Assembly: GCF_006345805.1 (NCBI RefSeq)
Contig: NC_043015.1
Span: forward strand, 18,662,001 to 18,726,000
Direction of reading: 5' to 3'
DNA from: Octopus sinensis
Lineage: Eukaryota
DNA: 64,000 nucleotides
Part shown: one piece after another, positions 6,694 through 47,833 of the stretch
How the letters are laid out: each line of letters begins with the position of its first letter
Numbering within the stretch: the stretch's first letter is position 1
Notes under the pieces: model-generated
Database searches by the model: none
What the model was told of the DNA's origin: nothing
Seen by the model: only the letters and a program-made list of their open reading frames with translations
Translations under genes and position numbers: made by a program

Positions 6694-6792
6694 TTCTTGG
6701 TCATATTCCCTCGGAAATCTCTGAGTTCTTGGTCATATTCCCTCGGAAATCTCTGAGTTCTTGGTCATATTCCCTCGGAAATCTCTGAGTTC
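6694..6792. repeat. 3 x 32-bp tandem repeat TTCTTGGTCATATTCCCTCGGAAATCTCTGAG within the LINE ORF1 3' end
   Basis: Three exact copies read directly. Confidence 0.95.
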
Positions 6793-18289: not shown

Positions 18290-19800
18290 CACCAAGCTCT
18301 ATCTTCCATCATCCATGACCGCGTCTCTTCTGCCCTCCCCCACCGCCACCAACCTCATCGTCCGAACACCCCTTACCTCTACCATCTATTACCTTCCCAA
18401 AATACATAAACCCGACAACCCTGGCTGCTCCATTGTTTCCGTCTGCAATTGTCCCACAGAACTCATCTCAAAATACCTTGACCGCATCCTGTCCCCTCTG
18501 GTTGCTGCCCTCCCATCCCATATACATGACACCAATCATGCTCTTCGCCTTTTTAATTCCTTCTTAAATCCTGGCCCCTCACACCTCCTCTTACCCTTAG
18601 ACATCAAATTCCTACGAACGCTGATCCCCCACAACGACGGTCTCTTAGTCCTCCAATACTTCCTCGACCGCCGCCCTGACCTCACACCCAGCACCTCCGC
18701 CCTTCTCCGTCTGGCAGAGCTCGTCTTCACCCTAAACTGCTTTACGTTCGCCGGGGAGATCTACCAACAGATGTCTGGGGGTCGCTATGGAAACGCGAAT
18801 GGGCCCCAATTTCGCCAACCTATTTGTTGGTCACATTGAGGTCCAAGTATTCTCCCAATTCTCCGGACCGACTCCAGAGCTATTCGGCCGCTACATAGAC
18901 AACTCTATAAGCACCGCCTCCGTCTCCCGCGAACAACTCTGCCGCTTCATCTCTTTCCTCTCTAACTTTCACCGTTCTCTCCAATTTATTTCTACCATCT
19001 CTCTTACTATTGACCTCCCCTCCCACTCTCTCACCACATCCGCCACTTCAAACCCACGGATTCGCACTTCTATCTTAACCTTTCTTCCTCCCATCCCTCC
19101 CACATCAAGCGGGCCATCCTCTACTCCTAGTCCCTCCGCCTCCGACGCTTGTGCACCCAGGACCAGGATTTCGAGACCCAGTTCCAGTACATTAGCCGCC
19201 TGTTCTTGCATCGAGGATACCCATCCACCCTTGTCCAAACCGCCCTTGACCGCGCACATCTAATCGATCACACCACTGCCCTCTCTCTTCTGACCGCACC
19301 CCTTTCCCCTCCTTTTCACCCCTTCATCCTACTATTTCGTCGGAGAATCCTACGGACTTTCCGTCGACTCCAGCTATATCGCACCACCCACCCCATTTTC
19401 CCCAACCCACACTTGCCTTCCTTTAAACACAAAGTTCACTCATACATACACATATAAACAGCCAACAACACACACACACATGCTATTACACACACACAGA
19501 GACTTGTGCGCACGCACATACTCACACATACACACACATACCGCCTTTTCTTATTCTCTCCTGTCTTAGAACATGTTTTTCAATCATTCCCTTCTGGTCA
19601 TTTCAAAATGTAACTGCATGTGAATCGTTGGCGATTTTTTCCCCTCCGTCTTCCTTTTCTCTTGGACTTTCCTCTGTCTTCCGTTATTGAAGAAGAGCTT
19701 TGCTTGAAACGTAAAACTACCTTTCTTTCCTTCCTGAGCATCTGCTAATCCTTTGCATGTATCACGTCCTCGCGCTGTTTTTTTTTTGTCTTTCTTCTTG
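18290..19800 (+). mobile_element. Decayed Penelope-like element (RT fragment and pLTR with a degenerate hammerhead motif)
   Basis: YYLPKIHKPDNPG..SKYLDRIL..DIK...IPHNDGL; AMETRMGPNFANLF..FGRYIDN; ...LFLHRGYP; TTGAAGAAGAGCTTTGCTTGAAACGTA at 19687-19713. Confidence 0.9.
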
Positions 19801-23151: not shown

Positions 23152-23227
<76 letters not shown>

Positions 23228-23496
23228 TTAATAAGGGTGAGAGAATTAGATACTAATTTAATAGTATATTTATTCAACACCAAGTGGCCTAGTGCTACGA
23301 GAAACCTGGATTATTATAATATTTTATAACATATTATAATATTTTTACAAAATAAATATAAGAGAGTGGTCACTATATTGCTCATTCTAGCACCAGTTAA
23401 TCCAAAAGGTTTCAACCACGAAAATACATGATTCCCATGAAAGCCAGTACGACTGTTAGCTCACACGGACAGGGCAAGTAAAAAATAACAAAAATA

Positions 23497-23592
23497 CAGA
23501 TTATTTTGGGACAATTGTTTCGCTATTAATGAATTAAATGTAATATTACTTACAAAAAAATCCATTTGTAGCTCGTCAGCCAAGACTATCTG
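23497..23592 (-). ncRNA. Type I hammerhead ribozyme, copy 1
   Basis: Reverse complement of the motif described for 25584-25679; predicted cleavage after the C at 23510. Confidence 0.85.
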
Positions 23593-24030
23593 GATGAAAT
23601 CCACTCAATCACACGCCAGATATTACCATAACGATAAATACGCGTGTGGTTCAATTGATTACATCCGACGTTATAATTCAAATGCCCCAACCAACAGCGC
23701 GCCAAACTTTCACGGAAAACAAATACAGCATTTAGAAATAAATGCAGCATAATTATAATTAATTAATAAGGGTGAGAGAATTAGATACTAATTTAATAGT
23801 ATATTTATTCAACACCAAGTGGCCTAGTGCTACGAGAAACCTGGATTATTATAATATTTTATAACATATTATAATATTTTTACAAAATAAATATAAGAGA
23901 GTGGTCACTATATTGCTCACTCTAGCACCAGTTAATCCAAAAGGTTTCAACCACGAAAATACTGATTCCCATGAAAGCCAGTACGACTGTTAGCTCACAC
24001 GGACAGGGCAAGTAAAAAATAACAAAAATA

Positions 24031-24126
24031 CAGATTATTTTGGGACAATTGTTTCGCTATTAATGAATTAAATGTAATATTACTTACAAAAAAATCCATT
24101 TGTAGCTCGTCAGCCAAGACTATCTG
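24031..24126 (-). ncRNA. Type I hammerhead ribozyme, copy 2
   Basis: Identical core; predicted cleavage at 24044. Confidence 0.85.
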
Positions 24127-24563
24127 GATGAAATCCACTCAATCACACGCCAGATATTACCATAACGATAAATACGCGTGTGGTTCAATTGATTACATCC
24201 GACGTTATAATTCAAATGCCCCAACCACAGCGCGCCAAACTTTCACGGAAAACAAATACAGCATTTAGAAATAAATGCAGCATAATTATAATTAATTAAT
24301 AAGGGTGAGAGAATTAGATACTAATTTAATAGTATATTTATTCAACACCAAGTGGCCTAGTGCTACGAGAAACCTGGATTATTATAATATTTTATAACAT
24401 ATTATAATATTTTTACAAAATAATATAAGAGAGTGGTCACTATATTGCTCACTCTAGCACCAGTTAATCCAAAAGGTTTCAACCACGAAAATACATGATT
24501 CCCATGAAAGCCAGTACGACTGTTAGCTCACACGGACAGGGCAAGTAAAAAATAACAAAAATA

Positions 24564-24659
24564 CAGATTATTTTGGGACAATTGTTTCGCTATTAATGAA
24601 TTAAATGTAATATTACTTACAAAAAAATCCATTTGTAGCTCGTCAGCCAAGACTATCTG
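24564..24659 (-). ncRNA. Type I hammerhead ribozyme, copy 3
   Basis: Identical core; predicted cleavage at 24577. Confidence 0.85.
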
Positions 24660-25055
24660 GATGAAATCCACTCAATCACACGCCAGATATTACCATAACG
24701 ATAAATACGCGTGTGGTTCAATTGATTACATCCGACGTTATAATTCAAATGCCCCAACCAACAGCGCGCCAAACTTTCACGGAAAACAAATACAGCATTT
24801 AGAAATAAATGCAGCATAATTATAATTAATTAATAAGGGTGAGAGAATTAGATACTAATTTAATAGTATATTTATTCAACACCAAGTGGCCTAGTGCTAC
24901 GAGAAACCTGGATTATTATAGTATTTTATAACATATTATAATATTTTTACAAAATAAATATAAGAGAGTGGTCACTATATTGCTCACTCTAGCACCAGTT
25001 AATCCAAAAGGTTTCAACCATGAAAATACATGATTCCCATGAAAGCCAGTACGAC

Positions 25056-25144
25056 TCTTGGCTGACGAGCTACAAATGGATTTTTTTGTAAGTAATATTA
25101 CATTTAATTCATTAATAGCGAAACAATTGTCCCAAAATAATCTG
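25056..25144 (+). ncRNA. Type I hammerhead ribozyme, copy 4 (distal helix I truncated by the inversion junction)
   Basis: TTGG-CTGACGA-GCTA..TAGC-GAA-ACAATTGT-C-CCAA; predicted cleavage after C25131. Confidence 0.82.
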
Positions 25145-25583
25145 TATTTTTGTTATTTTTTACTTGCCCTGTCCGTGTGAGCTAACAGTCGTACTGGCTT
25201 TCATGGGAATCATGTATTTTCGTGGTTGAAACCTTTTGGATTAACTGGTGCTAGAGTGAGCAATATAGTGACCACTCTCTTATATTTATTTTGTAAAAAT
25301 ATTATAATATGTTATAAAATATTATAATAATCCAGGTTTCTCGTAGCACTAGGCCACTTGGTGTTGAATAAATATACTATTAAATTAGTATCTAATTCTC
25401 TCACCCTTATTAATTAATTATAATTATGCTGCATTTATTTCTAAATGCTGTATTTGTTTTCCGTGAAAGTTTGGCGCGCTGTTGGTTGGGGCATTTGAAT
25501 TATAACGTCGGATGTAATCAATTGAACCACACGCGTATTTATCGTTATGGTAATATCTGGCGTGTGATTGAGTGGATTTCATC

Positions 25584-25679
25584 CAGATAGTCTTGGCTGA
25601 CGAGCTACAAATGGAATTTTTTGTAAGTAATATTACATTTAATTCATTAATAGCGAAACAATTGTCCCAAAATAATCTG
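25584..25679 (+). ncRNA. Type I hammerhead ribozyme, copy 5
   Basis: Helix I CAGATAGTCTTGG/CCAAAATAATCTG; core CUGACGA; helix II GCTA/TAGC; GAAA; palindromic helix III ACAATTGT; GUC cleavage triplet, cut after C25666. Confidence 0.88.
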
Positions 25680-26118
25680 TATTTTTGTTATTTTTTACTT
25701 GCCCTGTCCGTGTGAGCTAACAGTCGTACTGGCTTTCATGGGAATCATGTATTTTCGTGGTTGAAACCTTTTGGATTAACTGGTGCTAGGGTGAGCAATA
25801 TAGTGACCACTCTCTTATATTTATTTTGTAAAAATATTATAATATGTTATAAAATATTATAATAATCCAGGTTTCTCGTAGCACTAGGCCACTTGGTGTT
25901 GAATAAATATACTATTAAATTAGTATCTAATTCTCTCACCCTTATTAATTAATTATAATTATGCTGCATTTATTTCTAAATGCTGTATTTGTTTTCCGTG
26001 AAAGTTTGGCGCGCTGTTGGTTGGGGCATTTGAATTATAACGTCGGATGTAATCAATTGAACCACACGCGTATTTATCGTTATGGTAATATCTGGCGTGT
26101 GATTGAGTGGATTTCATC

Positions 26119-26214
26119 CAGATAGTCTTGGCTGACGAGCTACAAATGGATTTTTTTTTAAGTAATATTACATTTAATTCATTAATAGCGAAACAATTGT
26201 CCCAAAATAATCTG
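26119..26214 (+). ncRNA. Type I hammerhead ribozyme, copy 6
   Basis: Same core; predicted cleavage after C26201, 535 nt from the previous site. Confidence 0.87.
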
Positions 26215-26352
26215 TATTTTTGTTATTTTTTACTTGCCCTGTCCGTGTGAGCTAACAGTCGTACTGGCTTTCATGGGAATCATGTATTTTCGTGGTTGAA
26301 ACCTTTTGGATTAACTGGTGCTAGAGTGAGCAATATAGTGACCACTCTCTTA

Positions 26353-26440
<88 letters not shown>

Positions 26441-26602
26441 GTACGTACACACACACATCAGTATCAAGATTCGTTGGAATCTAGGTATATCAACGCATAG
26501 GGCGCCATGATTGGCCGGGTGCGTAGTATTGAGCTTACAGTACGTTGAAGCAACTCATAGTTGTCCTTGATGGTAGTATACTGTAAGTATGTATACACAC
26601 CC

Positions 26603-27030: not shown

Positions 27031-29006
27031 ATGGCTACTGGTCGCCACGAGGCCAAGGCGCAAATCAAGCGTGACGCCGAAACAAATGAGCAAGATTCCC
27101 TGCCACTAAACGCTGAACCTGACAGTTTGAACGACACTAACACCACCACCACCACCAACTATCAGCATCAACAGCAGCAACAACAACAAAACCAAGGTCG
27201 CCACTAATGATTCCACCATCAACACCGACACCCTCCTTGAAAACGCTTACGACGTTGATTTCCCTATACTGCCTTCTCCACAATTTCATGAAGGAGAGAA
27301 AAAGGGAAAAAGCAACACAGGCGCAAATGAACGCTAACATCGCGACCTCCACACTGGTAAACAATCCGACTTCACAGTTATCTACTGCTACTACGAACGA
27401 CTCTGCCACAAACATCACCACCACCACCACCACCACCACCACCACACCACCACCACCACCACTCCCCACCACCTCCACAAAAAACAAGACGAATTTCGCG
27501 GAAGCCATACGACCGAAAAGAAGAATTTTAAAATTTACTCATCAACAAATACAAGACACAAAGTCTTTACTCACCAAACAAGGCGACACAATACATTTAA
27601 ATATTCCACGGAACATTTTGGAAGAAACACAAAAGAAGACCATCATCTACAAAATACTCAACACCAAAACAAAGAAACCAGAAAGCCCAGCTACAGAAAA
27701 GATTGAGAAGTGCCTCGCTTCTGTGTGGAAGTTCCGAAATTATGTGAATTGAGGGTGTAAATTTGCTACCGTGCAAGTTCGCTTCCATACGGAAGAACTA
27801 GCAAATACGTTTTCGACGCTTTCTCTGCGCACATACCAGGTAACAATGGTACCTAGCTACCTTGGGCGCAGAGTAACGAAAATAACAATAAATAATGTGC
27901 CCCCAGAAGTGGATACCCAGTGGCTGGTATCGGCCATCTGCTTCGATATAGAAGAAGCAGATATTTTAGAAATCGCCGACATTCCAGAGGAAATCTGGAC
28001 TGGTAAAAAGCTTGAAATATTGCTTCAAATCACTCAAGAAGCAATAAATAATTTACCAACCAGTGTTCAACTGACAAAAGACCAAAAATTGTATGTAGTA
28101 GTGCAGGGCAGGATGCCAAGATGCTATTTGTGCAACAGTGAGGCACACCTCAGATATGATTGCCCAACTGCTGCCAGAAATAGGCAACAGCAACCACCCC
28201 CAAAACCTGGAAGAAAACCCCTGCTACCCACATCACGTTCAACGCAAAAGACAGGACAAACAGCAGACGACGTAAAAACTGTTTCCCCCTCACCAAGAAG
28301 AGAAACAAAACCATCACAATTACCTTCGACATCGCAACCAACTAGAGAAAAACACCACCACCAACATACAAATACAGACCAACACCAACACCAGCACCAA
28401 GAACAACAACCAAGAAAACAAATAACAATGACGAAAAGACAAATTCTGCCCCTAATACCTCAACAACACAAATACCACACAAAACAACAACACCTTCTAC
28501 AAACACACATATAGAAGCAAACACTTTGCCCTTACCCCCTTCTGATTCGTCAGACTTTTCGTCTAACGACAAAAGTTCAACAGAATGGCACAGGGGGTAA
28601 AAGGAAAAGACCCCCCAAAACCACGAAACAAGCAAATGCAGGTAAAACTGGGAGATATATAACTTCTGACAGTCCCTTACACATACAAACCAACAACGAC
28701 GCTGCAAAAACACACAAACATCTAACAGCAATAGACACAGAAAATACAAAACTAATGAATCACATCGCATCTAACACAAAAATTTGTGAAGATGACTATA
28801 AACTGAACAACCATCCACGCACTACACCACCGACACACATAAAAATAGTACACGTCACACAAACGCAGCACCACACACTCAAAACTCTCTTTCCAAATGC
28901 GGTCGGGGGGTACCAGAAGTATTTATCAAAAAAACTTTTTAAGAACCTCCTCAAAGTCATCCCAAAAGAGGAGGAAACTACTCAAACTTTCGAAACAAGT
29001 AAGTAA
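27031..29006 (+). pseudogene. LINE ORF1 (gag-like nucleic-acid chaperone), with stops and frameshifts
   Basis: CYLCNSEAHLRYDC = CX2CX4HX4C zinc knuckle; T/Q/P-rich low-complexity flanks; pieces in ORFs 27010-27207, 27207-27752, 27771-28514 and 28755-29006. Confidence 0.85.
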
Positions 29007-29064
29007 CCTTCCCTCTCGTCTCTTTCACTGTTGTGTGTGAAACACAAATTTTTGACCATCAATT

Positions 29065-31951
29065 ATGCTTAAATTAGGTTGTGTGAATGTGCGTGGCTTG
29101 GCGTCGGCTTGGAAGCAAGGTTACCTTCTAAATGACATCAAGTTACTGAACGTTGATATAGTAGCTATCAGTGAAACTAGACTCAGTAAGCCGCGGGCCC
29201 TCGCGTCCATGTTTGGCGGTCAATTCGACATTTATTTTTCTCCCTGTCTGCCAAACATGGGTGGTGGTGGTACCGCGGTGCTTTTTCGAAAGAGTCTAAA
29301 CGTAAAAGTAAGATCAATATTCCTAGACCCGGAGGGTAGGCTGGTTGTCTTGGACGTGGATGGCAGAAATGGGTGTGCATTCCGTCTGATGGCAGTGTAT
29401 GCACCGTCCTTAACGGGTCGGGCGGATTTCTTCAGACGTCTAGAGGTTTTCCTGGGAACGTCTCGACCTTTACTGTTAGTAGTGGATTGGAACGCTACCT
29501 TGGACACGCATCTAAATTATGTGGGAATGGATAGTAAGAGAAGGGGATGTAAGTGCTTCAATGACCTGCTCAGACGTTTCCATTTGTCTGACAGGTTCCG
29601 ACTCGACCATCCGAATGTGCCAACGTAGACTTGGACAAACCGCTTCGGATCGTCGAGATCGTATCTTGATAGAGTTCTATGTAGAACAGAGGATAGAGAT
29701 AGTGTAGGATGTCCACAATTTAAAATAGTCAGCTACACAGATCACAAATTTGTGACGTGTACGCTCGACTTAGATAAGACACATAGGCAGGGTCCCGGTT
29801 ACTGGAAACTGAACACGTCGCTCTTAGTGCGACAGGTTTACAGGAACCGGATTAGCGAGTTAATTAAGAAGGCGTTAACGGGAGCCATCGTTAACAACCG
29901 CTGGTGGTTTTCCCTGAAAATGGCAATCAGATCGGAATCAATTACGTTTAGCAAGGAATTAGCGATAGATCGAAATAGAGTAGAGGGAGACTTAGTTAAG
30001 AAACTAGGAGAGGTACTTACAACTGGCAGTGCAACAAACGTGCTGGCTGCGAGGATGGCCATCGACCAACACCTCAACGCCAAACACGAAGGTTGCGTCG
30101 TCAAAGCTAAAATGCGTGCCTTGAGGCCCGGGTAGTGGAGGCGCAACGTGGCAACAGAGCTACCATTCGGTCTCTAATAGATCAACAGGGATGCAATTTA
30201 CTCGAACCCGAAAGGATGTGTGAGGCCTTTCAACAGCACTTTGCTCGACTGTTTGGTGCGAGTGGTGGGTCGGAACGCGGAATGGACTTCAGTGCCTACC
30301 TGAACGGCCTGCCGCGGCTCTCGGCAAGAGAAGCAGAGTGTTGTGAGAGACCCATCACAGCTGCCGACGTACGGGATGCGATGGCGGGCTGCGCGAGGGA
30401 TAAGTCGCCTGGTTTGGATGGTCTACCCTACGAGCTGTATTGTCAAATGCCAGACTTGTTTGGCGACCTCTTGGCATCCGTCTACTGCAACTGGCAACAA
30501 AACAGGAGAATCCCCGGTTTCGTGAGCCGAGGTGCAGTGACGTTGCTGAAGAAAGACCCAAACAAGGGGAATTTTATAGATAATTTCAGGCCCATCACTC
30601 TGCTCAACGCAGATTTGAAAATTTTGGCCAAAGTAATAGCCGAGAGGCTGGCGCTTGTCATCGATAAACTGGTCAACAAGGCGCAAACATGCGCCGTGCT
30701 GGGCAGAACCATCCATGTCAACCTCCATCTGATGCGCTACATCGTGGACAAGGTAGTTAAGGATCCTGGCATGGGTGGGGCGCTGATCAATTTGGATCAA
30801 TCTAAAGCTTTCGTTAGGGTCGACCTCAGGGTGGCTGGCTTCGGTCCCGTCTTCCGCGGTTGGATCGCTGCCTTGTATAGCGGCATCCGATCGGTAATTC
30901 GAGTAAACGGTCACCTGTCGAAACCGTTTGACATCACGCGTTCGGTCCGTCAGGGATGTCCCCTGTCGGCGCTTCTGTATGCATTGACTCTCGAGCCGCT
31001 ACTGCGGAAGCTGGCGACACCGATAGGCAATCCCACGGGAACTGGGTTGCGGGACGAGCGTGTCGGCATATGCGGACGATGTCACCGTCATAGTGTCGAG
31101 CGAAAAGCACATCGAGATGCTAGGCGAGACACTAAAAGAATACGAAACGGTGACGGGAGCGAAAATTAACCCGGAAAATCAGTGGGTTTGCTACTCGGCA
31201 CCTGGAGAAGCAAGCCCATACCGCCCAACAGCGACTCAGTAGTGGGACGCTGGACGGACCAGTTAAATTGCTCGAGGTCTGGTTCAGTTCGGACCTCCAA
31301 ATGGATAAGAACTGGGACGAGATCACGAGTAGAGTGGTCGCTCTCAGCCAAACATGGGCCGAGAGAAAGCTGTCTCTAAAAGGTCGGGCGGAGGTGGTTG
31401 ACCGTCGTGATATGTTCCGATGCAACCATCACGAAATTAGAACGCATACTCTTCCGCTTCCTGTGGAAGGGTGGCGTTCCGATGGTGAGGCGGTCCATTT
31501 GCTGTCAACATCCGTTAAACGGAGGACTGGGCATGCCGTGGTTAATGATGCGCAGGCATGCGCTGAGACTGCGGCATCTCTGGAACTTCATCGATGACGG
31601 TGAACAGGTGTGGACGCTGTTTGTGAGGCGCGCCTTTCCGCAGCTCGTCTCACTGACCGAACTGCAAACATGGATCAGAAAGAGACCGAAACTGGGCGAT
31701 TGTCGCCAAGCTCTACTGCAGCTCTGATAGCTATGGCGAAAGAATGCGTGTGCTGGACGCGTTTGAAAGGCCTACAAACAAACATTTTTCTCTCTGGTCA
31801 GTCTCTCGTCAACTTTTTCAAGTACCACTTGAAAAGGAGGATGAGAATAGAGAGGAAAGTATTGTCGAATGAAAGTTTCAATAAAAAATGGATAAATGTG
31901 GCAAGAATGGTCAGTATGAAAGACGACACCATTTTAAACATAAATCTGTAA
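29065..31951 (+). pseudogene. LINE ORF2 (APE endonuclease and reverse transcriptase), with stops, frameshifts and a C-terminal deletion
   Basis: MLKLGCVNVRGL..AISETR..VDWNATLD; KSPGLDGLPYELY; NFRPITLLNADLKILAK; SVRQGCPLS; SAYADDV; GGLGMP. The zf-RVT segment seen in the 3075-10145 copy is missing. Confidence 0.92.
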
Positions 31952-37639: not shown

Positions 37640-40600
37640 TTTTTTTTCTTCTTTCAAATTTTCTTCCATTTCTTGCCGAGTGTCTTCCCGACTCCTAGGG
37701 CAAAGAAACTCATAGTGTATATTGGTAGGCCATTAAACCAAACTCAGTAGTTCGTTCATTTTTTTTTTTTTTAAAGTTAAATTAAAATACATGAGCAGCA
37801 ACAGTTCTCACATCGACAATGCTCTTCTCAATACGTGTGATGTACCAGTTAAGACAATCTTTTGCACTTCTTGCAGGGATGGTAAGCCAGGGATCATTCT
37901 CATATAATTTTCGGTTCCCTTCTTGATCATTCCTAGTGCTCCTACGATCACTGGTATTGTAACCGCCTTGAGATGCCACATTTTCTCAATTTCAATGTGT
38001 AGGTCTTTATATTTTCTGAGCTTGTCAAACTCTTTCGCTGAGATATTATGATCACAGGGGATGCTCATGTCGATCAATAAGCAAACTTTATTGTTTTGGT
38101 CTTTCACAACAATATCTGGTTTATTGGCCTTGATGGTTCGGTCTGTATGTACTGGAAAGTCCCACAGAATGGTTACATTTTCTCCTTCAGTTACAGCCTC
38201 AGGGTGGTGATTATACCACTTGTCGGCAGTTTTGATATTGTAATGCCGACTTATTAGCCAGTGTAGATATTGGCCAACTCTGTCATGTCTTAATTTATAC
38301 TCCACTGGTGCTAAGACTTTACATCCAGAGATTAGGTGGTCCACTGTTTCAATCATGTCGTTGCAGAATCGGCATTTTGGGTCTGCTCCATTTTTCATCA
38401 CATTGGCCTGGTAGTTCCGGGTTAATAGGCTTTGGTCTTGAGCAGCCAGGATGAAACCTTCGCTCTCTGCTTTTAGCCCTGAGCTCCGCAGCCACTGATG
38501 GGTTTGCTTCTGGTCAACATCAGCTTGTTTGCTGCGGGTCACATATTTGCCGTGCAGAGGTTTCTCCTCCCACCTATCAGCCAATTGCTCGTGCGCTTTT
38601 TTCATTGCCATCATTTTCACCTTCTTTGCAACAATAGTTGCCGTACTTCCCTTGGGTTGTTCAGTTTGGGTATCCTGCACGAGATCAATAGCAAATTTTT
38701 TGCCTTCCTTGATGATAGAATGAAGCTTCTTTCGTCTCTCGTGATTTTCCACGAGCTTTAGCATCCAGTCATTCGATATTTCGAGATATTTGGCCAGTCC
38801 AATTGTGGTTGTTTTGTAAGCTAGTTCAAATTGGATCAGGCCTCGACCTCCTTGGGCTCTGGGAAGGTAAAGGCGATCTACGTCTGCCTTTGGGTGGTGC
38901 ATCCTATTACAACTCAGCAGCTTGCGTATTTTTCTATCTATATTCTTTACTTCACTTATATTCCAGTTCAACACATTGTAGCTATAAGTAACAACTGGAA
39001 CTGGTAAGGAATTTATAGCTAACACCTTGTTACGTGCATTTAGTTCAGATTTCAGGACTGCACGAACTCTCCTATAACATTCCTTCCTGATTTTCTCTTT
39101 CATGCTTGCATGCTGAATACCAGAGCCTTCATTTATCCCTAAATATTTGTATGTCTGTTCTTGCTCAAGCTCTCTTATGACTGTGTCAACATCTAACACG
39201 ACTGAATTTGTGGTCTTCACTTTCCCTTTCTGGAAAGTGGCCTTGGCACACTTCTCAAGTCCAAACTCCATCCCGATGTCATCGCTGAATGCTTTCACGG
39301 TGCGCAATAGGCCTTCAAGTTCATTATTGTCTTTACCATAAGTTTTAAGTCATCCATATAAAATAGATGGCTTATTTTTTTATTGGCAATTTTATACCCA
39401 TACCCTGTTCTGTTTAATTCACTTGTAAGGGGTATTAGGGCTATGCAGAATATTAAAGGTGAAAGTGAGTCACCTTGAAAAATTCCACAGTTGATGTTTA
39501 TATTTTCTGAGGCAAGTACTCCATTAGAGTGGTATAATTGGAGATTCGTATTCCACAACGACATATTGTGCTTCAGGAAGTTTGAAATCACAGGGGAAAT
39601 TTTAAAGATGTCCAGCGATCTCAAGATCCATGGATGCGGTATACTGTCGAAGGCCTTTTTATAGTCAATCCATGCGGTGCTGAGATTTCTGCGCTTGTTG
39701 TGACAGTTCTCAAGGATCATACGATTGATTAGCAGTTGATCTTTGCATCCGTAAGAGCCTCGGCGGCACCCTTTTTGTTCAATGGGGAAAATATCGTTCT
39801 TCTCCATGAATGCATATGTTTTCTCCGCCAGGATAGATGTTAGGATTTTATACGTGGTGGATAGACAGGTTATAGGCCGATAGTTTTTTGGAAGGTTGGT
39901 TTCGTTATTCTTTGGGAGTAGGTAAGTAATGCCACTTGCTAACCATTCAGGTGTTTTCTTTGGGTCTCTCAAAATTCCATTGAGCAGCTGAACTAGCTTA
40001 CCGTGTGCGCACGGGAGCGATGCGAGCCAGAAATTCGGCACCCTATCTTTACCGGGGGATTTCCAATTATGGGCCTTCGTGAGTGCCTTTCTTAGGTCTG
40101 CTATTGTGATGTCTTCCCATGCTTGTTGTTGTAAATTTTGGTAGGATCCTTCAGTTTGTATAATCCAGTCTGCATTTATGTTGTACGTCTTCTTGTCACT
40201 CCAAATCCTTTCCCAAAAGTTTTGAACTTCTTCCATGGGAGGGGGGTCTTTAACGGTTACTTTCTCCTTCCCTATTTCTCTGTAGAATTTTTTGGCATTG
40301 GATGTGAACAGCTTATTTTGCTTGTAAAACTTGTTTCTCTTCTCAAATCTTCGTATTCTTTGGGCTTTTGCTTGGACTTTTTGTTTCAGCGTTTCTTTTA
40401 TTGATATCAGTTCTTCTCTTGGTGAGGATCCAAAATTTCTCTTCATCTTTCTTCCTGTTCTGGATCTTACATCATTTCCACATATTAGTTCATTTAATAT
40501 TGATATTTCCCCTCTCATAAATTCAATCTCTTTTTCAATTTTACTTCTCCAGGTTTGATTTCTTCCCAGGTTTTGTTTTCTTTGTTTTTTCGGGGGCATA

Positions 40601-41479
40601 CAGCTGGTTTCAATTGCCCTAGCAGAAGCGTAAATAATTTCATTTAACTCAGTAAAATCAGGTTTTAATTCTCGTATTATTTCATTTGTTACATAGTTGC
40701 CAATTTGGATTTGTTTTTTATTTTGGTTTGTATTTGAGAGTTTATGAAGCGGTTCTCTATCATTCATACTTGTATGTCTTACAACTTCAAGCGTATTCAG
40801 GATTTTCTGCCTCATTTCTGCCATAGACTCTCTGTGTTCTTCAGCAAATGCGAGATCTTCAGTTACTGTTGTTTTTTCGTTTTCCTGGCTATCTATTTAA
40901 CAGGTACAATAGAATTTCTTGTATCTTCAGGCCTTTGCGTACTTTGGTCAGATGGCAGTCTTTCAATTAAGCCTCGTGGCGGGCTATACTGTTCATCTGA
41001 TTCTTCATTTCCTTTGTGTCTTATATTTATGTCATTTTCCGTTGCGTGCTTGATCGCACTTATTTCACTGTCTGTGAGTCTGTTATTTCTAAAGATATCC
41101 CTCCTCACATTTGCTAATTTGTTCTCGTCCAAATAGGGCCTACTGTCTTGATTCCGTGTTCTCCATATACTGTAAGAGTTTGCGGTGTGTCTCTCTTGAG
41201 ATGGCCTACCTAATGCATAGTAATAAGCGTATATTACTTCTTTATACTCTTCTCGGGTCCATTTGTTCCGCTTACATTTTTCTTTCTGTGGTGGTTGTGG
41301 TGGTGAACTTGGAGGGCTCGAGTTGGGGGATTTCCCGTTCAAGTGACCATCCATGTCCGTATTCGGAGAAGAGTTTGTGCAAGTTGTTGACTTTTCGATC
41401 CCAGGCTGGCTCTTCCCTGGGGGACGCGCTTCCAGATTAACCATAGGACAAGCGATTTGGTATACTGATTTAGTTTTCC

Positions 41480-41551: not shown

Positions 41552-42005
41552 TTACTACTATTTGTCATTATTGATATTTCCTCTGATCCGACATGAGTTT
41601 TCATGATTATTATTATTTTCATTTATTATTAAAAGGTATTATTGAATGTAGTTTAGTTTCAACTTTTGTGTTGATCTTGAAATGATCATGAATATGTGAG
41701 TGTTTAAGGGAATAGTAGGAGCAAGAAAGACAGCTTGGTGAATACATTAAATTCCTCAGGTCTGTAAGTAGAAAAGATCAGCAATAGGCATTCCTGTGCG
41801 ATAAGGAGATCAAAGCGGCTTCACCCCCTTGGGGTCAGCAGAGGTCAAATGTGTTTACTACTACTAGCGATCAATGAGAGCGCTGATCATGGCCTTGAAA
41901 AGAACCAATCTACTTTGTTATATTTTTAATTACTGATAGAAAAATATTTATATGTATGTATATATATATATATATATATATAGATATATATATATATATA
42001 TATAA

Positions 42006-42083
<78 letters not shown>

Positions 42084-42257
42084 GTTTAATATTTGTTGTG
42101 CAAGATTTTTTATGTGAAGTCGTGTGTTGAAACAGATATTGTTATATTTCGGAATGGTCATATTGCCAGTTTAGCCAATAAAAACACACGCACTATATAT
42201 TTGGTGTTATTTTGCTTCAGTGATATTTATTTTTTACATTAATCTTAATCTTATTTC

Positions 42258-42302
42258 GGCCAAAGTTCTTTCGTCACACTCCTGTGACCGCATCAGTGGT
42301 CC
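42258..42302 (-). ncRNA. Minimal hammerhead-like motif (A9 to C variant) in the PLE 3' region
   Basis: Minus strand reads GGACCA-CTGATGC-G-GTCAC-AGGAGT-GTGAC-GAA-AG-AA-CT-T-TGGCC. Confidence 0.5.
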
Positions 42303-42615
42303 TTTGTTTTCTTCTCACTTACTTGTGTCTTTCCTTACTAACCGTCAGCCATTTTGTATTTCTATTGTATGTCTTCATCTGCGCATGCTTATATCTCTAT
42401 GTGCGTCTATGTTTACTTAGTGTGTGTGTGGGGGGATGCCTGTAATATTTGTATCTTCTGGTTATATACATTCTTGTAATTTGTATTTTGTTTTTGTTGT
42501 TGTTGCTTTTGTTCTAATTTTGTTCATGTGTTTACATCCACCCATTATTATCATTACATATGCTTGTATGTATGTATAACAACAATATTAGTAATAATAA
42601 TAATAAATCTAATTG

Positions 42616-42696
<81 letters not shown>

Positions 42697-42812
42697 TATA
42701 CACACATACACACACATATACACATATACATACACATATACATATATATAGTTATTCATTTCTATTTCTTTAATTATCTGTGTATTTATTATGTTTGCAG
42801 GATCCACTATCG

Positions 42813-45207
42813 TCATATGTTGTGGTGTGCGCTATTGCTCCATTCTAGTTTTCTATTCAGGCTAGGTTTATTTTCTATTATATGTGTAGCTTCTGTAATT
42901 TGTCTAATTGTTGCATCTGTTCTATGTGTGGACAATATCTTAATCTCTATGTTATTGATTGATCCCCCGTGTTCTTGTTCAGCGTGTTGGTACAGAATCG
43001 ATGAGCTTTTACCTTCCTTGAGTTGTCTCCAATGTTCATTCACCCGCTCACCAATGCTTCTTGCTGTTTCCCCTACGTATGTCGTTGTCTTGTTACTGCA
43101 TCGTCCCTCTATACATCTTATACTATAGACCACATTTCTGGCTTTACAGTTTGTTTGTGGGCTAAATCTACATACAGTGCAATAGTTATCCGTACAGAGA
43201 GTTCTACTAAAAGGATAGCTTCTACCAATTATAGATCTGATAGGGTTGCCTGGCTTTTCAACAACCTTAATTCTTAGTTTATCTAGGGTCCTTCTAAAGC
43301 GGTACGCCAGTTCACCTCCAGGGGTGGTGTCAACGAACATGACACTCTGGTATTTATGGCTATCATACCAAGAGTTGGCCTTCCCTATTTTCTTTTTTGT
43401 CCTTTCTATAGTGTTCCATGACTTGTTCCTATAGAGTGGGCAAATCCCATTCCTATCATTACATAATATATTATCAAATTTCTTCATGGCTCCTTTGTAT
43501 ACTCTGACCCTTTCTTTATGGCTGTAACCTGAGAACTGCATGCGGTGAATGAAATACTGTATGTGTCTCTTTAATTATGTAGGCTCGCACATGCGTGACA
43601 CATTTCTCATTATTCTGACGAGGTCTGCCATCAAAATATTGAATTTGGCATTGCCCGCAATGGCTGAGTTCCGGTGGATCAGGTATTTTGAGGCCATAGG
43701 TTTTGCATAGTATGAATGAAGGATTTGGGTTTTATTTTTCACAATTTCTAGCCAGAGTTCAGTGTCTAGTACTGGTAGTCTATGGTTGGGGTGTTTAGTG
43801 GGGTAGTCTATTGTGACCTTAATACTCTGGTGGATGGAGTTAGCTATTTGCTGGATGCTCTCCATAGTATTAGTTTCTATTACTATATCAACATTACTCT
43901 CTTGTGGGGGTGCCTTTACTACTATATTGATATCATCAACATAGCGAGAGTACATGTTTACAAGTATGGATTTCTGCAGTAGGCATTCTTTAAGCCTTCT
44001 GTCCCACCATACCATGAAGAGGTTGGCCACATCACAGCGATACTAACACCGATGGCTGCCCCCTCGTCCTGGGCATATATTTTATTATTAATTTAAATGT
44101 GTGGCCTTTTAGGGTAACTCTTATACTAGCTCCTAGTGCATGTGCGATCATTTTCTTTACCTGATGGACATTTGCGGGGCTCCGTATGGCTCTGGTCCAT
44201 CCGCGCCATCTTTCTATATGTGTCTTCCTAGCCATAGAAGTAATTGTAGGCGGTCTACCTCTTAAACATCTACTGGGGCAGAAACTACTAAGATTATGTT
44301 TATCTAAGTATTCACTATTATATGTCAGTCTAAGTAGGAGGCCCAGTTCTTCTGTGTCGACATTACAGAACTCCACCTGGCTCTCGTTGATCATCTCCAC
44401 GCACTTCTCCACTGCAAAATCTACGTCAATCGATGGGTATAGGGATACCACATCCATGCTACCTACTATACATCCTGTCAAGTCACAAGTTTTGTTACAG
44501 TCACTGATCCTGCTTAGGAGATCTTCTGTGCTGTCACACACATCAGGTGACATCCTGATTATAGGGCGTATGATCATTGAGAGGAAGTAGGAGATTCTGT
44601 AATTGCTAGCGATATTCGCTCCACAGACTGGTCTTGTTGGTGGTCCTGCTATAGGGTCAGTAAAACCTTTATGGTCCTTGCGAAGTCCATACAGTGCCGG
44701 GATATCATTGTTCCAGGCTTGGAAATTCCTTGCAGTACGTTTCTGAGGTCCTAGAACAATTGTCCACATCATCATGTGGGCATTGAGGACCTTTTCTCTC
44801 TCCTCATGCGCCTGTACAGTTGTTACTTTTGTATTGACGATATGAGGTTGCATTGCCTGGATGTAGTTCGGTAAGCTGTCTATTGACATCCTGCCGGACT
44901 TATCCGTGGGAAGGCATATCACCTCTCCGTTCCTCGTGCGCTGAATGAGCTTCTGTAGGCCACATGCAGGTTTAATCCCGAGTTGTTGGGCATCTGTCTT
45001 ATTCTGTCTCTGTCTCTTAATGTATAATCCTAAAATCTGTCTAAGTTTGGTCCTAGCTATAGTAAACTGTGCTTCCATGTGGTCATTAGTACGTCTTGGG
45101 ATGTATACTCTTTTGTTGAAGGGTAATGTTGTTGGATAAATTCGGTTCATGCAGTAAGTTTTGTCGCATACGTTGAAGAATTGAGTGTCAAAGGGATGGG
45201 TATACAT
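42813..45207 (-). pseudogene. PLE RT and GIY-YIG endonuclease ORF (two 1-nt deletions and one in-frame TAA)
   Basis: LPTDKSG, LYGLRKDHK, PTRPV, GSMDVVSLYPSID, YSRYVDD, LPVLDTE, Cys-rich linker CTDNYCTVC, CKARNVVYSIRC..YVGETARSIGERVNEH. Confidence 0.9.
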
Positions 45208-45601
45208 GTCAATGGTCTCTCTAGGGTTATCTTCATTATCGTTACTGTTTCCAACATCAGCCTTCCTATTATTATTATCACCATTACCACTACTACTACT
45301 ACTAGTATTCCTATTACCACCACAACTATCACTACTATCCTCATTACTACTTCTACTGTTACCATCACTACTACTACTACCACTATTATTGTTATTACCT
45401 TTATTCCTACTATTGCCATTATTACTATCATCGCTAGTGATATATTCATTGTTCCTGTTTTAAGATTAATGTAAAAAATAAATATCACTGAAGCAAAATA
45501 ACACCAAATATATAGTGCGTGTGTTTTTATTGGCTAAACTGGCAATATGACCATTCCGAAATATAACAATATATATATATACATACACATATATGTATAG
45601 T

Positions 45602-47244: not shown

Positions 47245-47833
47245 CATATTCTTTTCTACTCTAGGCACAAGGCCCGAAATTTTGGGGGGAGGAGGCCAGT
47301 CGATTAGATCGACCCCAGTACGCAACTGGTACTTAATTTATTGACCCCGAAAGAATGAAAGGCAAAGTCGACTTCGGCGGAATTTGAACTCAGAGCGTAG
47401 CGACAGGCGAAATACCTATTTCTTTACTACCCACAAGGGGCTAAACACAGAGAGGACAAACAAGGACAAACAAACAGATTAAGTCGATTACATCAACCCC
47501 AGTGCGTAACTGGTACTTATTTAATCGACCCCGAAAGGATGAAAGGCAAAGTCGACTTCGGCGGAATTTGAACTCAGAGCGTAACGGCAAACGAAATACC
47601 TATTTCTTTACTACCCATAAGGGGCTAAACACTGAGGGGACAAACAAGGACAGACAAACGGATTAAGTCGATTACATCAACCCCAGTGCGTAACTGGTAC
47701 TTATTTAATCGACCCCGAAAGGATGAAAGGCAAAGTCGACCTCGGCGGAATTTGAACTCAGAGCGTAACAGCAGACGAAACACCGCTAAGCACTTCACCC
47801 TGCGTGCTAACGTTTCTGCCAGCTCGCCGCCTT
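47245..47833 (-). mobile_element. Head-to-tail SINE trimer (head-body-tailA, body-tailA, body-tailB)
   Basis: 184-bp period (47417, 47601); junctions read GAAATACCTATTTC. Confidence 0.9.

What the first reader, a model, noticed from the sequence alone, without database searches (positions are those of the whole stretch)
23224..26358. Tandem array of 535-bp non-coding units, each with a canonical type I hammerhead ribozyme (retrozyme-like element)
Seen: near-identical units of about 535 bp with no internal ORF. Every complete unit contains TTGG-CTGACGA-GCTA...TAGC-GAA-ACAATTGT-C-CCAA. This is the full hammerhead core (C3-A9 CUGACGA, G12-A14, A15.1:U16.1, GUC triplet), with helix I extended to 13 positions (CAGATAGTCTTGG/CCAAAATAATCTG, two mismatches and one G-U). 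There are six copies, with cleavage sites spaced 533-535 nt (for example C25131, C25666, C26201). Established: tandem repeats punctuated by type I hammerheads define non-LTR retrozymes in metazoans, whose multimeric transcripts self-cleave into monomers with 5'-OH and 2',3'-cyclic phosphate ends that can circularise; reported animal monomers are usually shorter (about 150-400 nt). Inference: this is a young, unusually long-monomer retrozyme family, probably cephalopod, that yields 535-nt linear or circular RNAs. I cannot check whether it has been described.
Basis: partly seen in the sequence, partly recalled or inferred. Interest (0 to 1): 0.95.

Follow-up and report, generated by a model that had tools for sequence, protein, structure and literature searches.

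The report
Octopus hammerhead-ribozyme repeat (retrozyme) locus
This stretch of an octopus genome holds about six near-identical 535-bp non-coding repeats, each carrying a complete self-cutting hammerhead RNA motif. It is a new cephalopod example of the known animal "retrozyme" kind, arranged as two opposed arrays inside a TA microsatellite.

Summary
Window 23223-26361 contains 5.9 units of a 533-535 bp repeat, over 99% identical, 33% G+C, with no reading frame longer than 87 codons. There are six complete type I hammerhead cores. The locus is not one head-to-tail array. It is two arrays placed head-to-head: 3.4 units on the minus strand (25056 down to 23223) and 2.4 units on the plus strand (25057-26361). 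The motif exceeds chance: 0.015 matches are expected per 64 kb at the stringency observed. Rfam Hammerhead_1 aligns full-length at 27.4 bits (E=3e-5 in a 116-nt search). That is below the 34-bit gathering score, because of a 39-nt insertion in loop 2. The genome is Octopus vulgaris or a very close relative. The anatomy fits the metazoan non-LTR retrozyme, so multimeric transcripts would self-cleave into 535-nt RNAs that could circularise. A 535-nt monomer is inside the published range, so it is not unusually long. Both outer 3' ends run into (TA)n, and both 5' ends are truncated and joined head-to-head. A Penelope-like element family in the same genome shows the same signature, which points to that machinery. 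Cleavage, circles, copy number and conservation are untested. No other copy was found in about 400 kb of other octopus DNA.

The parts
23155..23222 (.). Left flank: compound microsatellite (CT)19 followed by (TA)15, abutting the 3' end of the minus-strand arm
   Evidence: TRF rows 23155-23192 and 23194-23224; sequence read; end mapping
23223..25056 (-). Minus-strand arm: 3.4 head-to-tail units. The sense (ribozyme) strand is the minus strand. The 5' end is truncated at unit position 56 and lies at the centre. The 3' end lies at about unit position 287, in the A+T-only stretch TTATTAATTAAT
24564..24659 (-). Hammerhead, minus strand, C17 at 24577, with both 13-nt strands of helix I
   Evidence: core 24577-24646; helix I read
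24031..24126 (-). Hammerhead, minus strand, C17 at 24044
23497..23592 (-). Hammerhead, minus strand, C17 at 23510
24044..24576 (-). Predicted 533-nt cleavage-to-cleavage monomer (minus strand)
23510..24043 (-). Predicted 534-nt cleavage-to-cleavage monomer (minus strand)
25057..25186 (+). Central spacer of the inverted repeat. It starts at the head-to-head junction 25056|25057 (1-nt microhomology). It contains the junction hammerhead (C17 at 25131), whose helix I 5' strand is cut down to CTTGG
25057..26361 (+). Plus-strand arm: 2.4 head-to-tail units. The 5' end is truncated at unit position 461 and lies at the centre. The 3' end lies at about unit position 160, in the stretch TTATATTTATTT
25584..25679 (+). 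Hammerhead, plus strand, C17 at 25666. Layout: helix I 25584-25596 / 25667-25679; core CUGACGA 25597-25603; helix II element 25604-25654 (4 bp plus a 43-nt hairpin insert); GAA 25655-25657; helix III ACAAUUGU 25658-25665
26119..26214 (+). Hammerhead, plus strand, C17 at 26201
25132..25666 (+). Predicted 535-nt monomer RNA. Linear fold -146.8 kcal/mol, z=-5.9. Circular fold -142.4 kcal/mol, 67% of bases paired
25667..26201 (+). Second predicted 535-nt monomer
26362..26440 (.). Right flank: (TA)n followed by (TG)n microsatellite, abutting the 3' end of the plus-strand arm
   Evidence: TRF rows 26351-26408 and 26404-26440
42052..45599 (-). Context, inferred partner only. [quoted passage not shown] Its family shows the same insertion signature elsewhere in the genome. 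It has no sequence similarity to the repeat unit

Best explanation
This is a locus of a non-LTR retrozyme, a non-coding and non-autonomous retroelement, in Octopus vulgaris or a very close relative.

Shown. The 535-bp units are over 99% identical, 33% G+C and without a usable ORF. Each carries a complete type I hammerhead: core CUGACGA, G10.1-C11.1, GAA, A15.1-U16.1 and a GUC cleavage triplet. Helix I is open. Helix II is 4 bp extended by a 43-nt hairpin. Helix III is 2 bp with an AAUU tetraloop inside the 8-nt palindrome ACAAUUGU.

Inferred mechanism. Transcripts that run outward from the centre of the locus, rightward on the plus strand and leftward on the minus strand, carry several hammerheads. 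Each hammerhead cuts after C17, either alone or as a double hammerhead in which two ACAAUUGU segments form an 8-bp helix III. [quoted passage not shown] Helix I holds those ends together, and an RtcB-type host ligase could close them into strongly self-paired circles.

Inferred origin of the locus. A retrozyme RNA, circular or multimeric, was reverse-transcribed at a break in a (TA)n microsatellite, primed from both sides at A/U-only stretches of the RNA. That would explain why the units run straight across the cleavage site, why the two 3' ends sit at different internal positions of the unit, why both 3' ends face outward into (TA)n, and why both 5' ends are truncated and joined head-to-head. 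The Penelope-like element family resident in this genome shows the same three traits, so it is the likely source of the enzymes.
For: Motif and chance. Only these six sites fit the descriptor, 0.015 are expected per 64 kb, and RF00163 matches full-length at 27.4 bits with E=3e-5.

Unit properties. These cover identity, period, absence of ORFs, 33% G+C, and absence of a PBS or polypurine tract. No protein relative exists for any frame.

RNA folding: the monomer folds far better than shuffles (z=-5.9). In the circular fold 67% of bases pair, and helices I and II of the hammerhead form. Helix III as a hairpin costs +2.4 kcal/mol, against -6.4 kcal/mol as an intermolecular 8-bp duplex.

Host.

Locus architecture.

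The Penelope-like family shows the same traits. Inverted 5'-truncated copies abut direct copies in L001 and L006. Partial or complete tandems occur in L002, L005 and L008. In most copies the 3' end ...AAACGTA runs straight into (TA)n.

Literature: the defining features of metazoan retrozymes, and a 2-bp-plus-tetraloop helix III as the usual invertebrate form, are in PMC7229834 and PMC7761336. Tandem and inverted insertions and microsatellite bias of Penelope-like elements are in PMC8557442. Retrozymes as derivatives of Penelope-like elements are in bioRxiv 10.64898/2026.07.22.740005.
Against: The Rfam score is below the curated threshold (27.4 against 34 bits), and the match vanishes in larger searches.

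The 43-nt insert in helix II is atypical. Whether the loop-loop contacts needed at physiological Mg2+ exist is unknown.

Predicted minimum-energy folds pair the core GACGA with UUGUC at the cleavage site, in place of helix III.

No second copy of the unit was found, neither in the rest of the window nor in about 400 kb of other O. vulgaris DNA. Mobility and conservation of the core therefore rest on a single locus.

The nine differences among the units carry no information about selection.

The unit has no sequence similarity to the Penelope-like element, and no hammerhead was found in that element.

(TA)n could have expanded from the A+T-rich ends of the array rather than being the insertion target.

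No expression data could be reached.
Confidence: 0.72

Rival explanations
1. It is an ordinary young satellite or segmental tandem duplication in which a hammerhead-like string arose or survives by chance and does nothing. The array grew by unequal exchange, and a fold-back event inverted part of it.
For: Only one locus was seen. Rfam is below the gathering score. There is no comparative or expression evidence. The octopus window is full of tandem repeats and microsatellites.
Against: A complete descriptor match is expected 0.015 times per 64 kb, which is about 1e-4 per 535-bp unit. All invariant core positions, G10.1-C11.1, the GUC triplet, a 13-position helix I and a palindromic helix III are present together. 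The RNA is unusually well paired. Every other retrozyme feature that could be tested is met.
Confidence: 0.12
2. The tandem units are real, but the head-to-head inversion is an assembly artefact, for example a chimeric fold-back long read. In that case the true locus is a single head-to-tail array.
For: Long near-perfect inverted repeats (1172 bp, 99.3%) are a known failure mode of long-read assembly. PMC8557442 notes that such complex structures often cause assembly problems. Three of the nine differences between units are 1-nt indels.
Against: The junction is not symmetric. The arms are offset by 130 nt and start at different unit positions, 56 and 461. A read-through of template and complement strands would give a perfect palindrome. 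The arms differ at several sites and have different lengths and different outer end points, each ending in its own microsatellite flank. The same head-to-head pattern recurs for the Penelope-like family at independent loci in GCA_951406725.2.
Confidence: 0.1
3. The repeats are the terminal (pseudo-LTR) part of an autonomous Penelope-like element, not a stand-alone non-autonomous element.
For: Hammerheads of Penelope-like elements lie in pseudo-LTRs, and those elements form tandem and inverted structures at microsatellites (PMC8557442). Such elements are present in the window.
Against: No RT or endonuclease ORF lies inside or next to the array. The unit has no similarity to the element at 42-45.6 kb or to anything else in the window. 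The hammerheads described for these elements are minimal variants (PMC7229834), whereas this one is canonical with long helices I and II.
Confidence: 0.05

Closest known systems
Metazoan non-LTR retrozymes (Cervera & de la Pena 2020, PMC7229834); the closest by host phylum is the Mytilus galloprovincialis retrozyme
   Same: Head-to-tail repeats, each with a type I hammerhead. Low G+C. No ORF, LTR, PBS or polypurine tract. Strongly self-paired monomer RNA. Helix III of 2 bp with a tetraloop, as in invertebrate hammerheads. Penelope-like elements in the same genome.
   Different: The unit is 535 bp, against about 350-390 bp in mussel and 170-400 nt in that paper. Helix II carries a 43-nt hairpin insert. 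The locus is two opposed arrays. Circular RNA and self-cleavage are not shown here. No sequence similarity to the mussel element could be tested.
Dolichopoda cave-cricket pDo500 satellite with hammerhead (PMC2837043)
   Same: A tandem repeat of about 500 bp with one type I hammerhead per unit. Single-hammerhead and double-hammerhead cleavage modes were both proposed for it.
   Different: pDo500 has documented conservation of core and stems across 12 species, and processing in vivo. Here there is one locus and no comparative data.
Newt/axolotl satellite 2 retrozymes and Schistosoma Sm-alpha hammerhead repeats
   Same: Type I hammerheads in repeats with a weak helix III. A palindromic loop allows two motifs to act as a dimer.
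   Different: The amphibian helix III is 1 bp with a palindromic tetraloop and clearly needs dimers. Here it is 2 bp with a tetraloop inside an 8-nt palindrome, so either mode is possible. The repeat length differs (about 330-350 nt in axolotl).
Penelope-like elements and their non-autonomous derivatives (PMC8557442; bioRxiv 10.64898/2026.07.22.740005)
   Same: The insertion signature: partial tandems, an inverted 5'-truncated copy joined at the 5' end, and junctions with microsatellites. The resident octopus family shows all three at independent loci.
   Different: No sequence similarity between the unit and the resident element, and no hammerhead detected in that element. In Xenopus, by contrast, retrozymes resemble the pseudo-LTRs.
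Plant LTR retrozymes
   Same: Non-coding, hammerhead-bounded RNAs thought to circularise and be reverse-transcribed.
   Different: Plant elements have type III hammerheads inside about 350-bp LTRs, a tRNA-Met PBS, a polypurine tract, 4-bp target duplications and over 55% G+C. None of these is present here.

Membership tests
Hammerhead ribozyme, type I (Rfam RF00163) | Invariant core: C3-U4-G5-A6-N7-G8-A9, G12-A13-A14, A15.1-U16.1 and H17 at the cleavage site | tested here: met
   CUGACGA ... GAA ... A...U-C in all six copies. The cmscan alignment matches every core position.
Hammerhead ribozyme, type I (Rfam RF00163) | Three helices around the core: helix I open, helices II and III closed by loops, G10.1-C11.1 at the base of helix II | tested here: met
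   Helix I has 13 positions (10 Watson-Crick, 1 G-U, 2 mismatches). Helix II is GCUA/UAGC plus a hairpin insert. Helix III is AC/GU with an AAUU loop.
Hammerhead ribozyme, type I (Rfam RF00163) | Score at or above the family's curated gathering threshold | tested here: not met
   27.4 bits against 34. No hit in the 64-kb, 4-kb or 601-nt searches. The shortfall comes from the 39-nt insertion in loop 2 and two unmatched helix II pairs in the model alignment.
Hammerhead ribozyme, type I (Rfam RF00163) | Tertiary contact between a helix I bulge and loop 2, needed for fast cleavage at low Mg2+ | not testable with these tools
   Internal mismatches exist in helix I (positions 1.5/2.5 and 1.8/2.8), and there is an internal loop after 4 bp of helix II. 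No structural or comparative test is available.
Hammerhead ribozyme, type I (Rfam RF00163) | Site-specific self-cleavage | not testable with these tools
   Needs in vitro transcription of monomeric and dimeric templates.
Metazoan non-LTR retrozyme | Head-to-tail repeats of a few hundred bp, one type I hammerhead per unit | tested here: met
   Spacing is 535 and 535 on the plus strand, 533 and 534 on the minus strand. The length lies within the 51-972 bp reported.
Metazoan non-LTR retrozyme | Low G+C (below 45-50%) | tested here: met
   0.327.
Metazoan non-LTR retrozyme | No protein-coding capacity; no LTR, PBS or polypurine tract | tested here: met
   Longest frame is 87 codons, longest ATG ORF 54 aa. 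No protein relatives. No purine run of 9 or more, and no tRNA-Met PBS within 2 mismatches.
Metazoan non-LTR retrozyme | Monomer RNA predicted to be stable and highly self-paired | tested here: met
   z=-5.9 against dinucleotide shuffles. Circular fold z=-6.0 with 67% of bases paired. The antisense strand is equally structured (z=-5.8), as expected for any self-complementary DNA.
Metazoan non-LTR retrozyme | Many copies dispersed in the genome (evidence of mobility) | tested here: inconclusive
   No other copy in the other 61 kb of the window or in about 400 kb of O. vulgaris loci. The whole genome could not be searched.
Metazoan non-LTR retrozyme | Expression as monomeric linear and circular RNAs | not testable with these tools
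   No transcriptome search by nucleotide sequence is available.
Metazoan non-LTR retrozyme | Co-occurrence with autonomous Penelope-like elements | tested here: met
   A Penelope-like element lies at 42052-45599(-). Further copies at 89-99% identity (most 93-99%) occur in seven other O. vulgaris loci.
Non-autonomous derivative of a Penelope-like element (Li et al. 2026 preprint) | Sequence similarity of the unit to the terminal (pseudo-LTR) region of a resident Penelope-like element | tested here: not met
   blastn of the unit against the window finds nothing outside the array (best hit E about 0.1, 20 nt). Only one family of these elements was available to test.
Non-autonomous derivative of a Penelope-like element (Li et al. 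2026 preprint) | Insertion architecture of these elements: partial tandem, inverted 5'-truncated copy at the 5' end, microsatellite junctions | tested here: met
   Array. The same traits in the resident family. Published description.
Plant LTR retrozyme | Type III hammerheads inside LTRs, with a PBS and a polypurine tract | tested here: not met
   The hammerhead is type I (helix I open). No LTR, PBS or polypurine tract.
Viroid-like, satellite or delta-like circular RNA replicon | Ribozyme in the complementary polarity as well, and/or an ORF, with no fixed genomic DNA copy | tested here: not met
   No ribozyme family matches the antisense strand (sensitivity is limited by the filters). No ORF. 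The DNA is embedded between host microsatellites.

The most novel reading that the evidence does not exclude
The locus is a readable record of how animal retrozymes integrate. A circular or multimeric hammerhead RNA was copied by the reverse transcriptase and GIY-YIG nuclease of a Penelope-like element, from both sides of a break in a (TA)n microsatellite, in a twin-primed rolling-circle reverse transcription started at internal A/U stretches. This gave two opposed multimeric arms joined head-to-head. If this pattern recurs at other loci of the family, it would be direct structural evidence for the proposed but unproven link between retrozymes and Penelope-like elements, and for a circular template. 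A side consequence: read-through transcripts of this locus would fold into a hairpin of about 1.17 kb that could feed small-RNA silencing of the family.
Probability: 0.3. Interest if true: 0.6.

Novelty: new member of a known kind. Interest (0 to 1): 0.4.

Why it matters
Tandem repeats carrying type I hammerheads are already known across animals, including molluscs, so the existence of this element would not surprise a specialist. No paper in the searchable library describes hammerhead repeats or retrozymes in cephalopods, so it extends the host range to a well-studied clade.

Two details are worth following up. First, the large hairpin inserted in helix II pushes the motif below the Rfam threshold and through the search filters. 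Standard annotation therefore misses it, and similar elements may be under-counted. Second, the locus architecture matches that of the resident Penelope-like family: head-to-head 5'-truncated arms, 3' ends at internal A/U stretches, and (TA)n on both sides. That makes the question of which enzyme mobilises animal retrozymes, and from what template, testable by a simple genome-wide survey in a species with a chromosome-scale assembly.

Tried and rejected
1. Rfam at the gathering threshold on the whole window, and at E<=10 on 4 kb and on 601 nt. No hammerhead was reported. Only a 116-nt search recovered RF00163. The microRNA, snoRNA and pestivirus UTR "hits" around the array are microsatellite or A+T-rich artefacts far below threshold.

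2. Looking for relatives. Exact and degenerate hammerhead patterns were scanned in metagenome, viral and prokaryotic genome collections. The single match, L003, is a chance hit inside a bacterial coding region.

3. Exact look-up of the 54-aa and 52-aa ORFs, and homology searches with the 54-aa ORF and with all 16 stop-to-stop frames concatenated. Nothing was found, so no gene caller has produced a protein from a relative of this unit.

4. Sampling about 400 kb of the O. vulgaris assembly through loci of Penelope-like elements. No copy of the unit and no credible hammerhead were found.

5. A hammerhead in the resident Penelope-like element. None was found by descriptor or by Rfam.

6. tRNA-like content of the unit. 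ARAGORN finds none. An apparent A-box-like string on the antisense strand (TGGCCTAGTGC), noted by eye only, was not pursued.

7. Selection inferred from variation within the array. There are only nine variable sites, none in the core or stems, and about half of such samples would show that by chance.

8. Minimum-energy folding as a test of the active structure. It is uninformative, because the predicted folds pair the core with the cleavage site.
Full report
**What is in the sequence**

Window 23223-26361 (3,139 bp) is built from a 533-535 bp unit. The repeat finder gives start-to-start spacings of 535, 533 and 534 for one set of copies and 535 and 535 for the other. It also reports long inverted repeats between the two sets, up to 740 nt at 100% complementarity. 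Cutting the region at the predicted cleavage sites and aligning the pieces in one orientation gives eight pieces: four complete units and four partial ones. They differ at nine positions, three of which are 1-nt indels. blastn of one unit against the window gives 98.8-100% identity over the long matches and nothing outside the array.

Three copies are on the plus strand, with C17 at 25131, 25666 and 26201. Three are on the minus strand, with C17 at 24577, 24044 and 23510. The locus is two tandem arrays in opposite orientation.

**How the two arms are arranged**

The sense (ribozyme) strand of the left arm runs from 25056 down to 23223 and holds 3.4 units. The sense strand of the right arm runs from 25057 up to 26361 and holds 2.4 units. 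The two 5' ends meet head-to-head at 25056|25057. Both are truncated at arbitrary unit positions, 56 and 461 counted from the cleavage site, and they share one nucleotide of microhomology. The innermost 1,172 bp of the arms form a 99.3% inverted repeat around a 130-nt spacer (25057-25186). That spacer holds a hammerhead whose helix I 5' strand is cut down to five nucleotides.

The two 3' ends face outward. They lie at different internal positions of the unit, about 287 and about 160, each inside a stretch made only of A and T. Each runs straight into a (TA)n microsatellite: (CT)19(TA)15 on the left and (TA)n(TG)n on the right.

**Is the hammerhead real?**

Reading the sequence gives the following layout:

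- Helix I: CAGAUAGUCUUGG pairs with CCAAAAUAAUCUG as 10 Watson-Crick pairs, one G-U and two mismatches.
- Core: CUGACGA.
- Helix II: GCUA/UAGC, with the canonical G10.1-C11.1 at its base, closed by a 43-nt segment that folds as an imperfect hairpin (-10.0 kcal/mol for the 51-nt element).
- G12-A13-A14.
- Helix III: A15.1-C15.2 / G16.2-U16.1 with an AAUU loop.
- C17.

A structural descriptor requires CUGANGA, helix II of at least 3 bp, GAAA, helix III of at least 2 bp, U-H at the cleavage site, and helix I of at least 3 bp. It finds only these six sites in the 64-kb window. Two hundred dinucleotide-preserving shuffles give 0.145 hits per window, or 0.015 at the stem lengths actually seen. That is about 1e-4 for a single 535-bp unit.

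Rfam gave no hammerhead hit at the gathering threshold on the window, at E<=10 on 4 kb, or on 601 nt. When only 116 nt were searched, which makes the filters lax, RF00163 Hammerhead_1 aligned over its whole length (positions 1-45 of 45) to 25591-25672. The score was 27.4 bits with E=3e-5, it was the top hit, and every core position matched. The score stays under the curated 34 bits because the model must pay for a 39-nt insertion in loop 2 and loses two helix II pairs. The motif is therefore a type I hammerhead by anatomy and by the family model, but it does not pass the curated threshold. This also explains why routine annotation would miss it.

**The unit as an RNA**

G+C is 33%. The longest ATG ORF is 54 aa. 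The longest stop-to-stop frame in a tandem reading is 87 codons, on the antisense strand. Neither the 54-aa ORF nor a concatenate of all 16 frames of 22 aa or more has any relative among 5.8 billion proteins. There is no purine run of 9 or more and no tRNA-Met primer-binding site.

The 535-nt cleavage-to-cleavage RNA folds at -146.8 kcal/mol, against -111.9 +/- 5.9 for shuffles (z=-5.9). The antisense strand is similar (z=-5.8). As a circle, 67% of the bases pair and helices I and II of the hammerhead appear in the minimum-energy structure. The program, however, pairs GACGA of the core with UUGUC at the cleavage site instead of forming helix III (the isolated 96-nt domain behaves the same way). 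Helix III is weak as a hairpin (+2.4 kcal/mol). The 8-nt palindrome ACAAUUGU can instead pair between two motifs (-6.4 kcal/mol). That is the double-hammerhead arrangement known from amphibian and cricket repeats. According to PMC7229834, a 2-bp stem with a tetraloop is the usual invertebrate form and often cleaves well as a single motif. Both modes remain open.

**Whose genome**

The 391-aa retroelement ORF at 44032-45207(-) is 98-99% identical to several proteins annotated in Octopus vulgaris, on chromosome-scale records. Loci fetched through those proteins come from assembly GCA_951406725.2. The window is therefore from O. vulgaris or a very close relative.

**What it is**

Every feature of the metazoan non-LTR retrozyme that could be tested here is met (PMC7229834; PMC7761336):

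- head-to-tail repeats with one type I hammerhead per unit;
- low G+C;
- no ORF, LTR, PBS or polypurine tract;
- a highly self-paired monomer;
- Penelope-like elements in the same genome.

Not testable here were self-cleavage, circular RNA, transcription and genome-wide copy number.

The length is not exceptional. A 2026 preprint reports consensus lengths of 51-972 bp, with a mean of 650 bp in ray-finned fishes, and finds that 75% of families have at most seven units per array. The cricket pDo500 hammerhead satellite is, to my knowledge, about 500 bp (PMC2837043, for its hammerhead and conservation).

I found no paper in the library that mentions hammerhead repeats or retrozymes in cephalopods. 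The only co-occurrence of those terms is a paper on Naiad Penelope-like elements, which lack canonical hammerheads.

**How the locus probably arose**

This part is inference. The window holds a Penelope-like element at 42052-45599(-). It has a broken RT ORF followed by a C-terminal GIY-YIG ORF. Pfam gives GIY-YIG at E=6e-4 in the window copy and 9.6e-7, above threshold, in the homologue P0118. Weak RVT_1 matches appear in homologues. The element is flanked by a 127-nt inverted repeat.

Copies at 89-99% identity (most 93-99%) occur in seven other octopus loci. In L001 and L006 an inverted, 5'-truncated copy abuts the 5' end of a direct copy; in L006 the junction is at adjacent bases, 9809|9808. 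L002 and L005 hold partial tandems, and L008 holds three full copies in tandem. In most copies the 3' end ...AAATATTTAAACGTA runs directly into (TA)n. These are the published hallmarks of insertion by Penelope-like elements: partial tandems, an inverted 5'-truncated copy at the 5' end, and microsatellite bias (PMC8557442).

The hammerhead array shows the same three traits. In addition, its units run uninterrupted across the cleavage site, and its two 3' ends lie at different internal A/U-only positions. That is what reverse transcription of a circular or uncleaved multimeric template would give, if primed from both sides of a break in (TA)n. It is not what a linear monomer ending at C17 would give.

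Against this reading:

- The unit has no sequence similarity to this Penelope-like element.
- No hammerhead was found in the element.
- (TA)n could have expanded from the A+T-rich ends of the array.
- It is a single locus.

**Alternatives**

A functionless satellite with a chance motif is unlikely, given the chance estimate and the coherence of all the other features. It cannot be excluded without cleavage or comparative data.

An assembly artefact could explain the inversion. Against that, the junction is offset by 130 nt, and the arms differ in length, in end points and at several bases. The same head-to-head pattern also recurs for the Penelope-like family at independent loci.

The repeat is not the terminus of an autonomous element. 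No RT or endonuclease ORF adjoins it, and nothing else in the window resembles it.

**Consequences of the head-to-head layout**

Sense transcripts must start near the centre and run outward. Cleavage would release two 535-nt RNAs from the plus arm (25132-25666 and 25667-26201) and RNAs of 533 and 534 nt from the minus arm (24576-24044 and 24043-23510). A transcript reading through the whole locus in either direction would carry antisense units first and sense units second. It could fold into a hairpin of about 1.17 kb, which would hide the ribozymes and might feed small-RNA pathways. This is speculation.

**Verdict**

This is a genuine type I hammerhead repeat and a new cephalopod member of the known non-LTR retrozyme kind. 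It is not a new category, and it is not unusually long. The added value lies in the corrected architecture and its match to the insertion signature of the resident Penelope-like element, and in the helix II insert that hides the motif from standard searches. Interest is moderate (0.4).

Noticed in passing
window 42052-45599 (-); L001 6783-13046; L006 7827-13238; L002 9351-15916; L008 220-12911: A young Penelope-like element family (most copies 93-99% identical, range 89-99%). It forms head-to-head inverted 5'-truncated pairs, partial tandems, and a run of three full tandem copies. In most copies the 3' end ...AAACGTA runs straight into (TA)n. The window copy has its ORF broken into three pieces and is flanked by a 127-nt inverted repeat (42122-42248 / 45460-45586). 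No hammerhead was detected in it, although canonical C-terminal-endonuclease Penelope-like elements usually carry one.
   Followed up: partly
window 25057-25144: The hammerhead at the inversion junction keeps only CTTGG of its helix I 5' strand. It lies in the 130-nt loop of the 1.17-kb inverted repeat, so it would be the only hammerhead left single-stranded in a hairpin transcript.
   Followed up: no
window 6831-9795: A large 40-bp satellite: about 73 copies, 93-95% matches, also scored at periods 82 and 122. It is preceded by three perfect 32-bp repeats at 6694-6792 and lies next to LINE fragments at 4886-6516 (-). The long 'ORFs' listed across it are repeat artefacts.
   Followed up: no
window 47298-47784: A 184-bp unit repeated 2.6 times (93% matches). 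From memory it resembles octopus SINE-like sequence. It was not checked.
   Followed up: no
window 26362-26467, 42632-42747, 41944-42017, 23182-23244: The Rfam microRNA matches (mir-297, mir-3149, mir-466, mir-1277) are (TA)n/(TG)n microsatellites scoring 20-49 bits against thresholds of 81-100. They are false positives.
   Followed up: yes
window 27771-31169 (+); 37808-40824 (-); 4886-6516 (-): Three LINE-type retrotransposon copies or fragments: an Exo_endo_phos endonuclease at 29065-29628 with an RVT_1 domain at 30135-31169, an RVT_1 domain at 39295-40824 with zf-RVT at 37808-39307, and fragments at 4886-6516. The window is mostly transposable elements and microsatellites, and no host gene was recognised.
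   Followed up: partly
window 18315-19263 (+): Two overlapping ORFs with an RT-like 'LPKIHK...' motif. There is no Pfam or NCBIfam hit and no similarity to the Penelope-like element at 42-45 kb (E=0.46). The retroelement fragment remains unclassified.
   Followed up: partly
window 25575-25690 compared with larger spans: The same hammerhead that scores 27.4 bits (E=3e-5) in a 116-nt search is absent from cmscan output for 601 nt, 4 kb and 64 kb, even at E<=10. The speed filters, not the score, remove it. Hammerheads with long helix II inserts are likely to be under-reported by routine Rfam annotation.
   Followed up: yes
L003 1210-1294: The only metagenome match to the degenerate hammerhead pattern lies inside a bacterial membrane-protein-like coding region. 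It is a chance hit, at roughly the rate expected for a 22-base pattern.
   Followed up: yes
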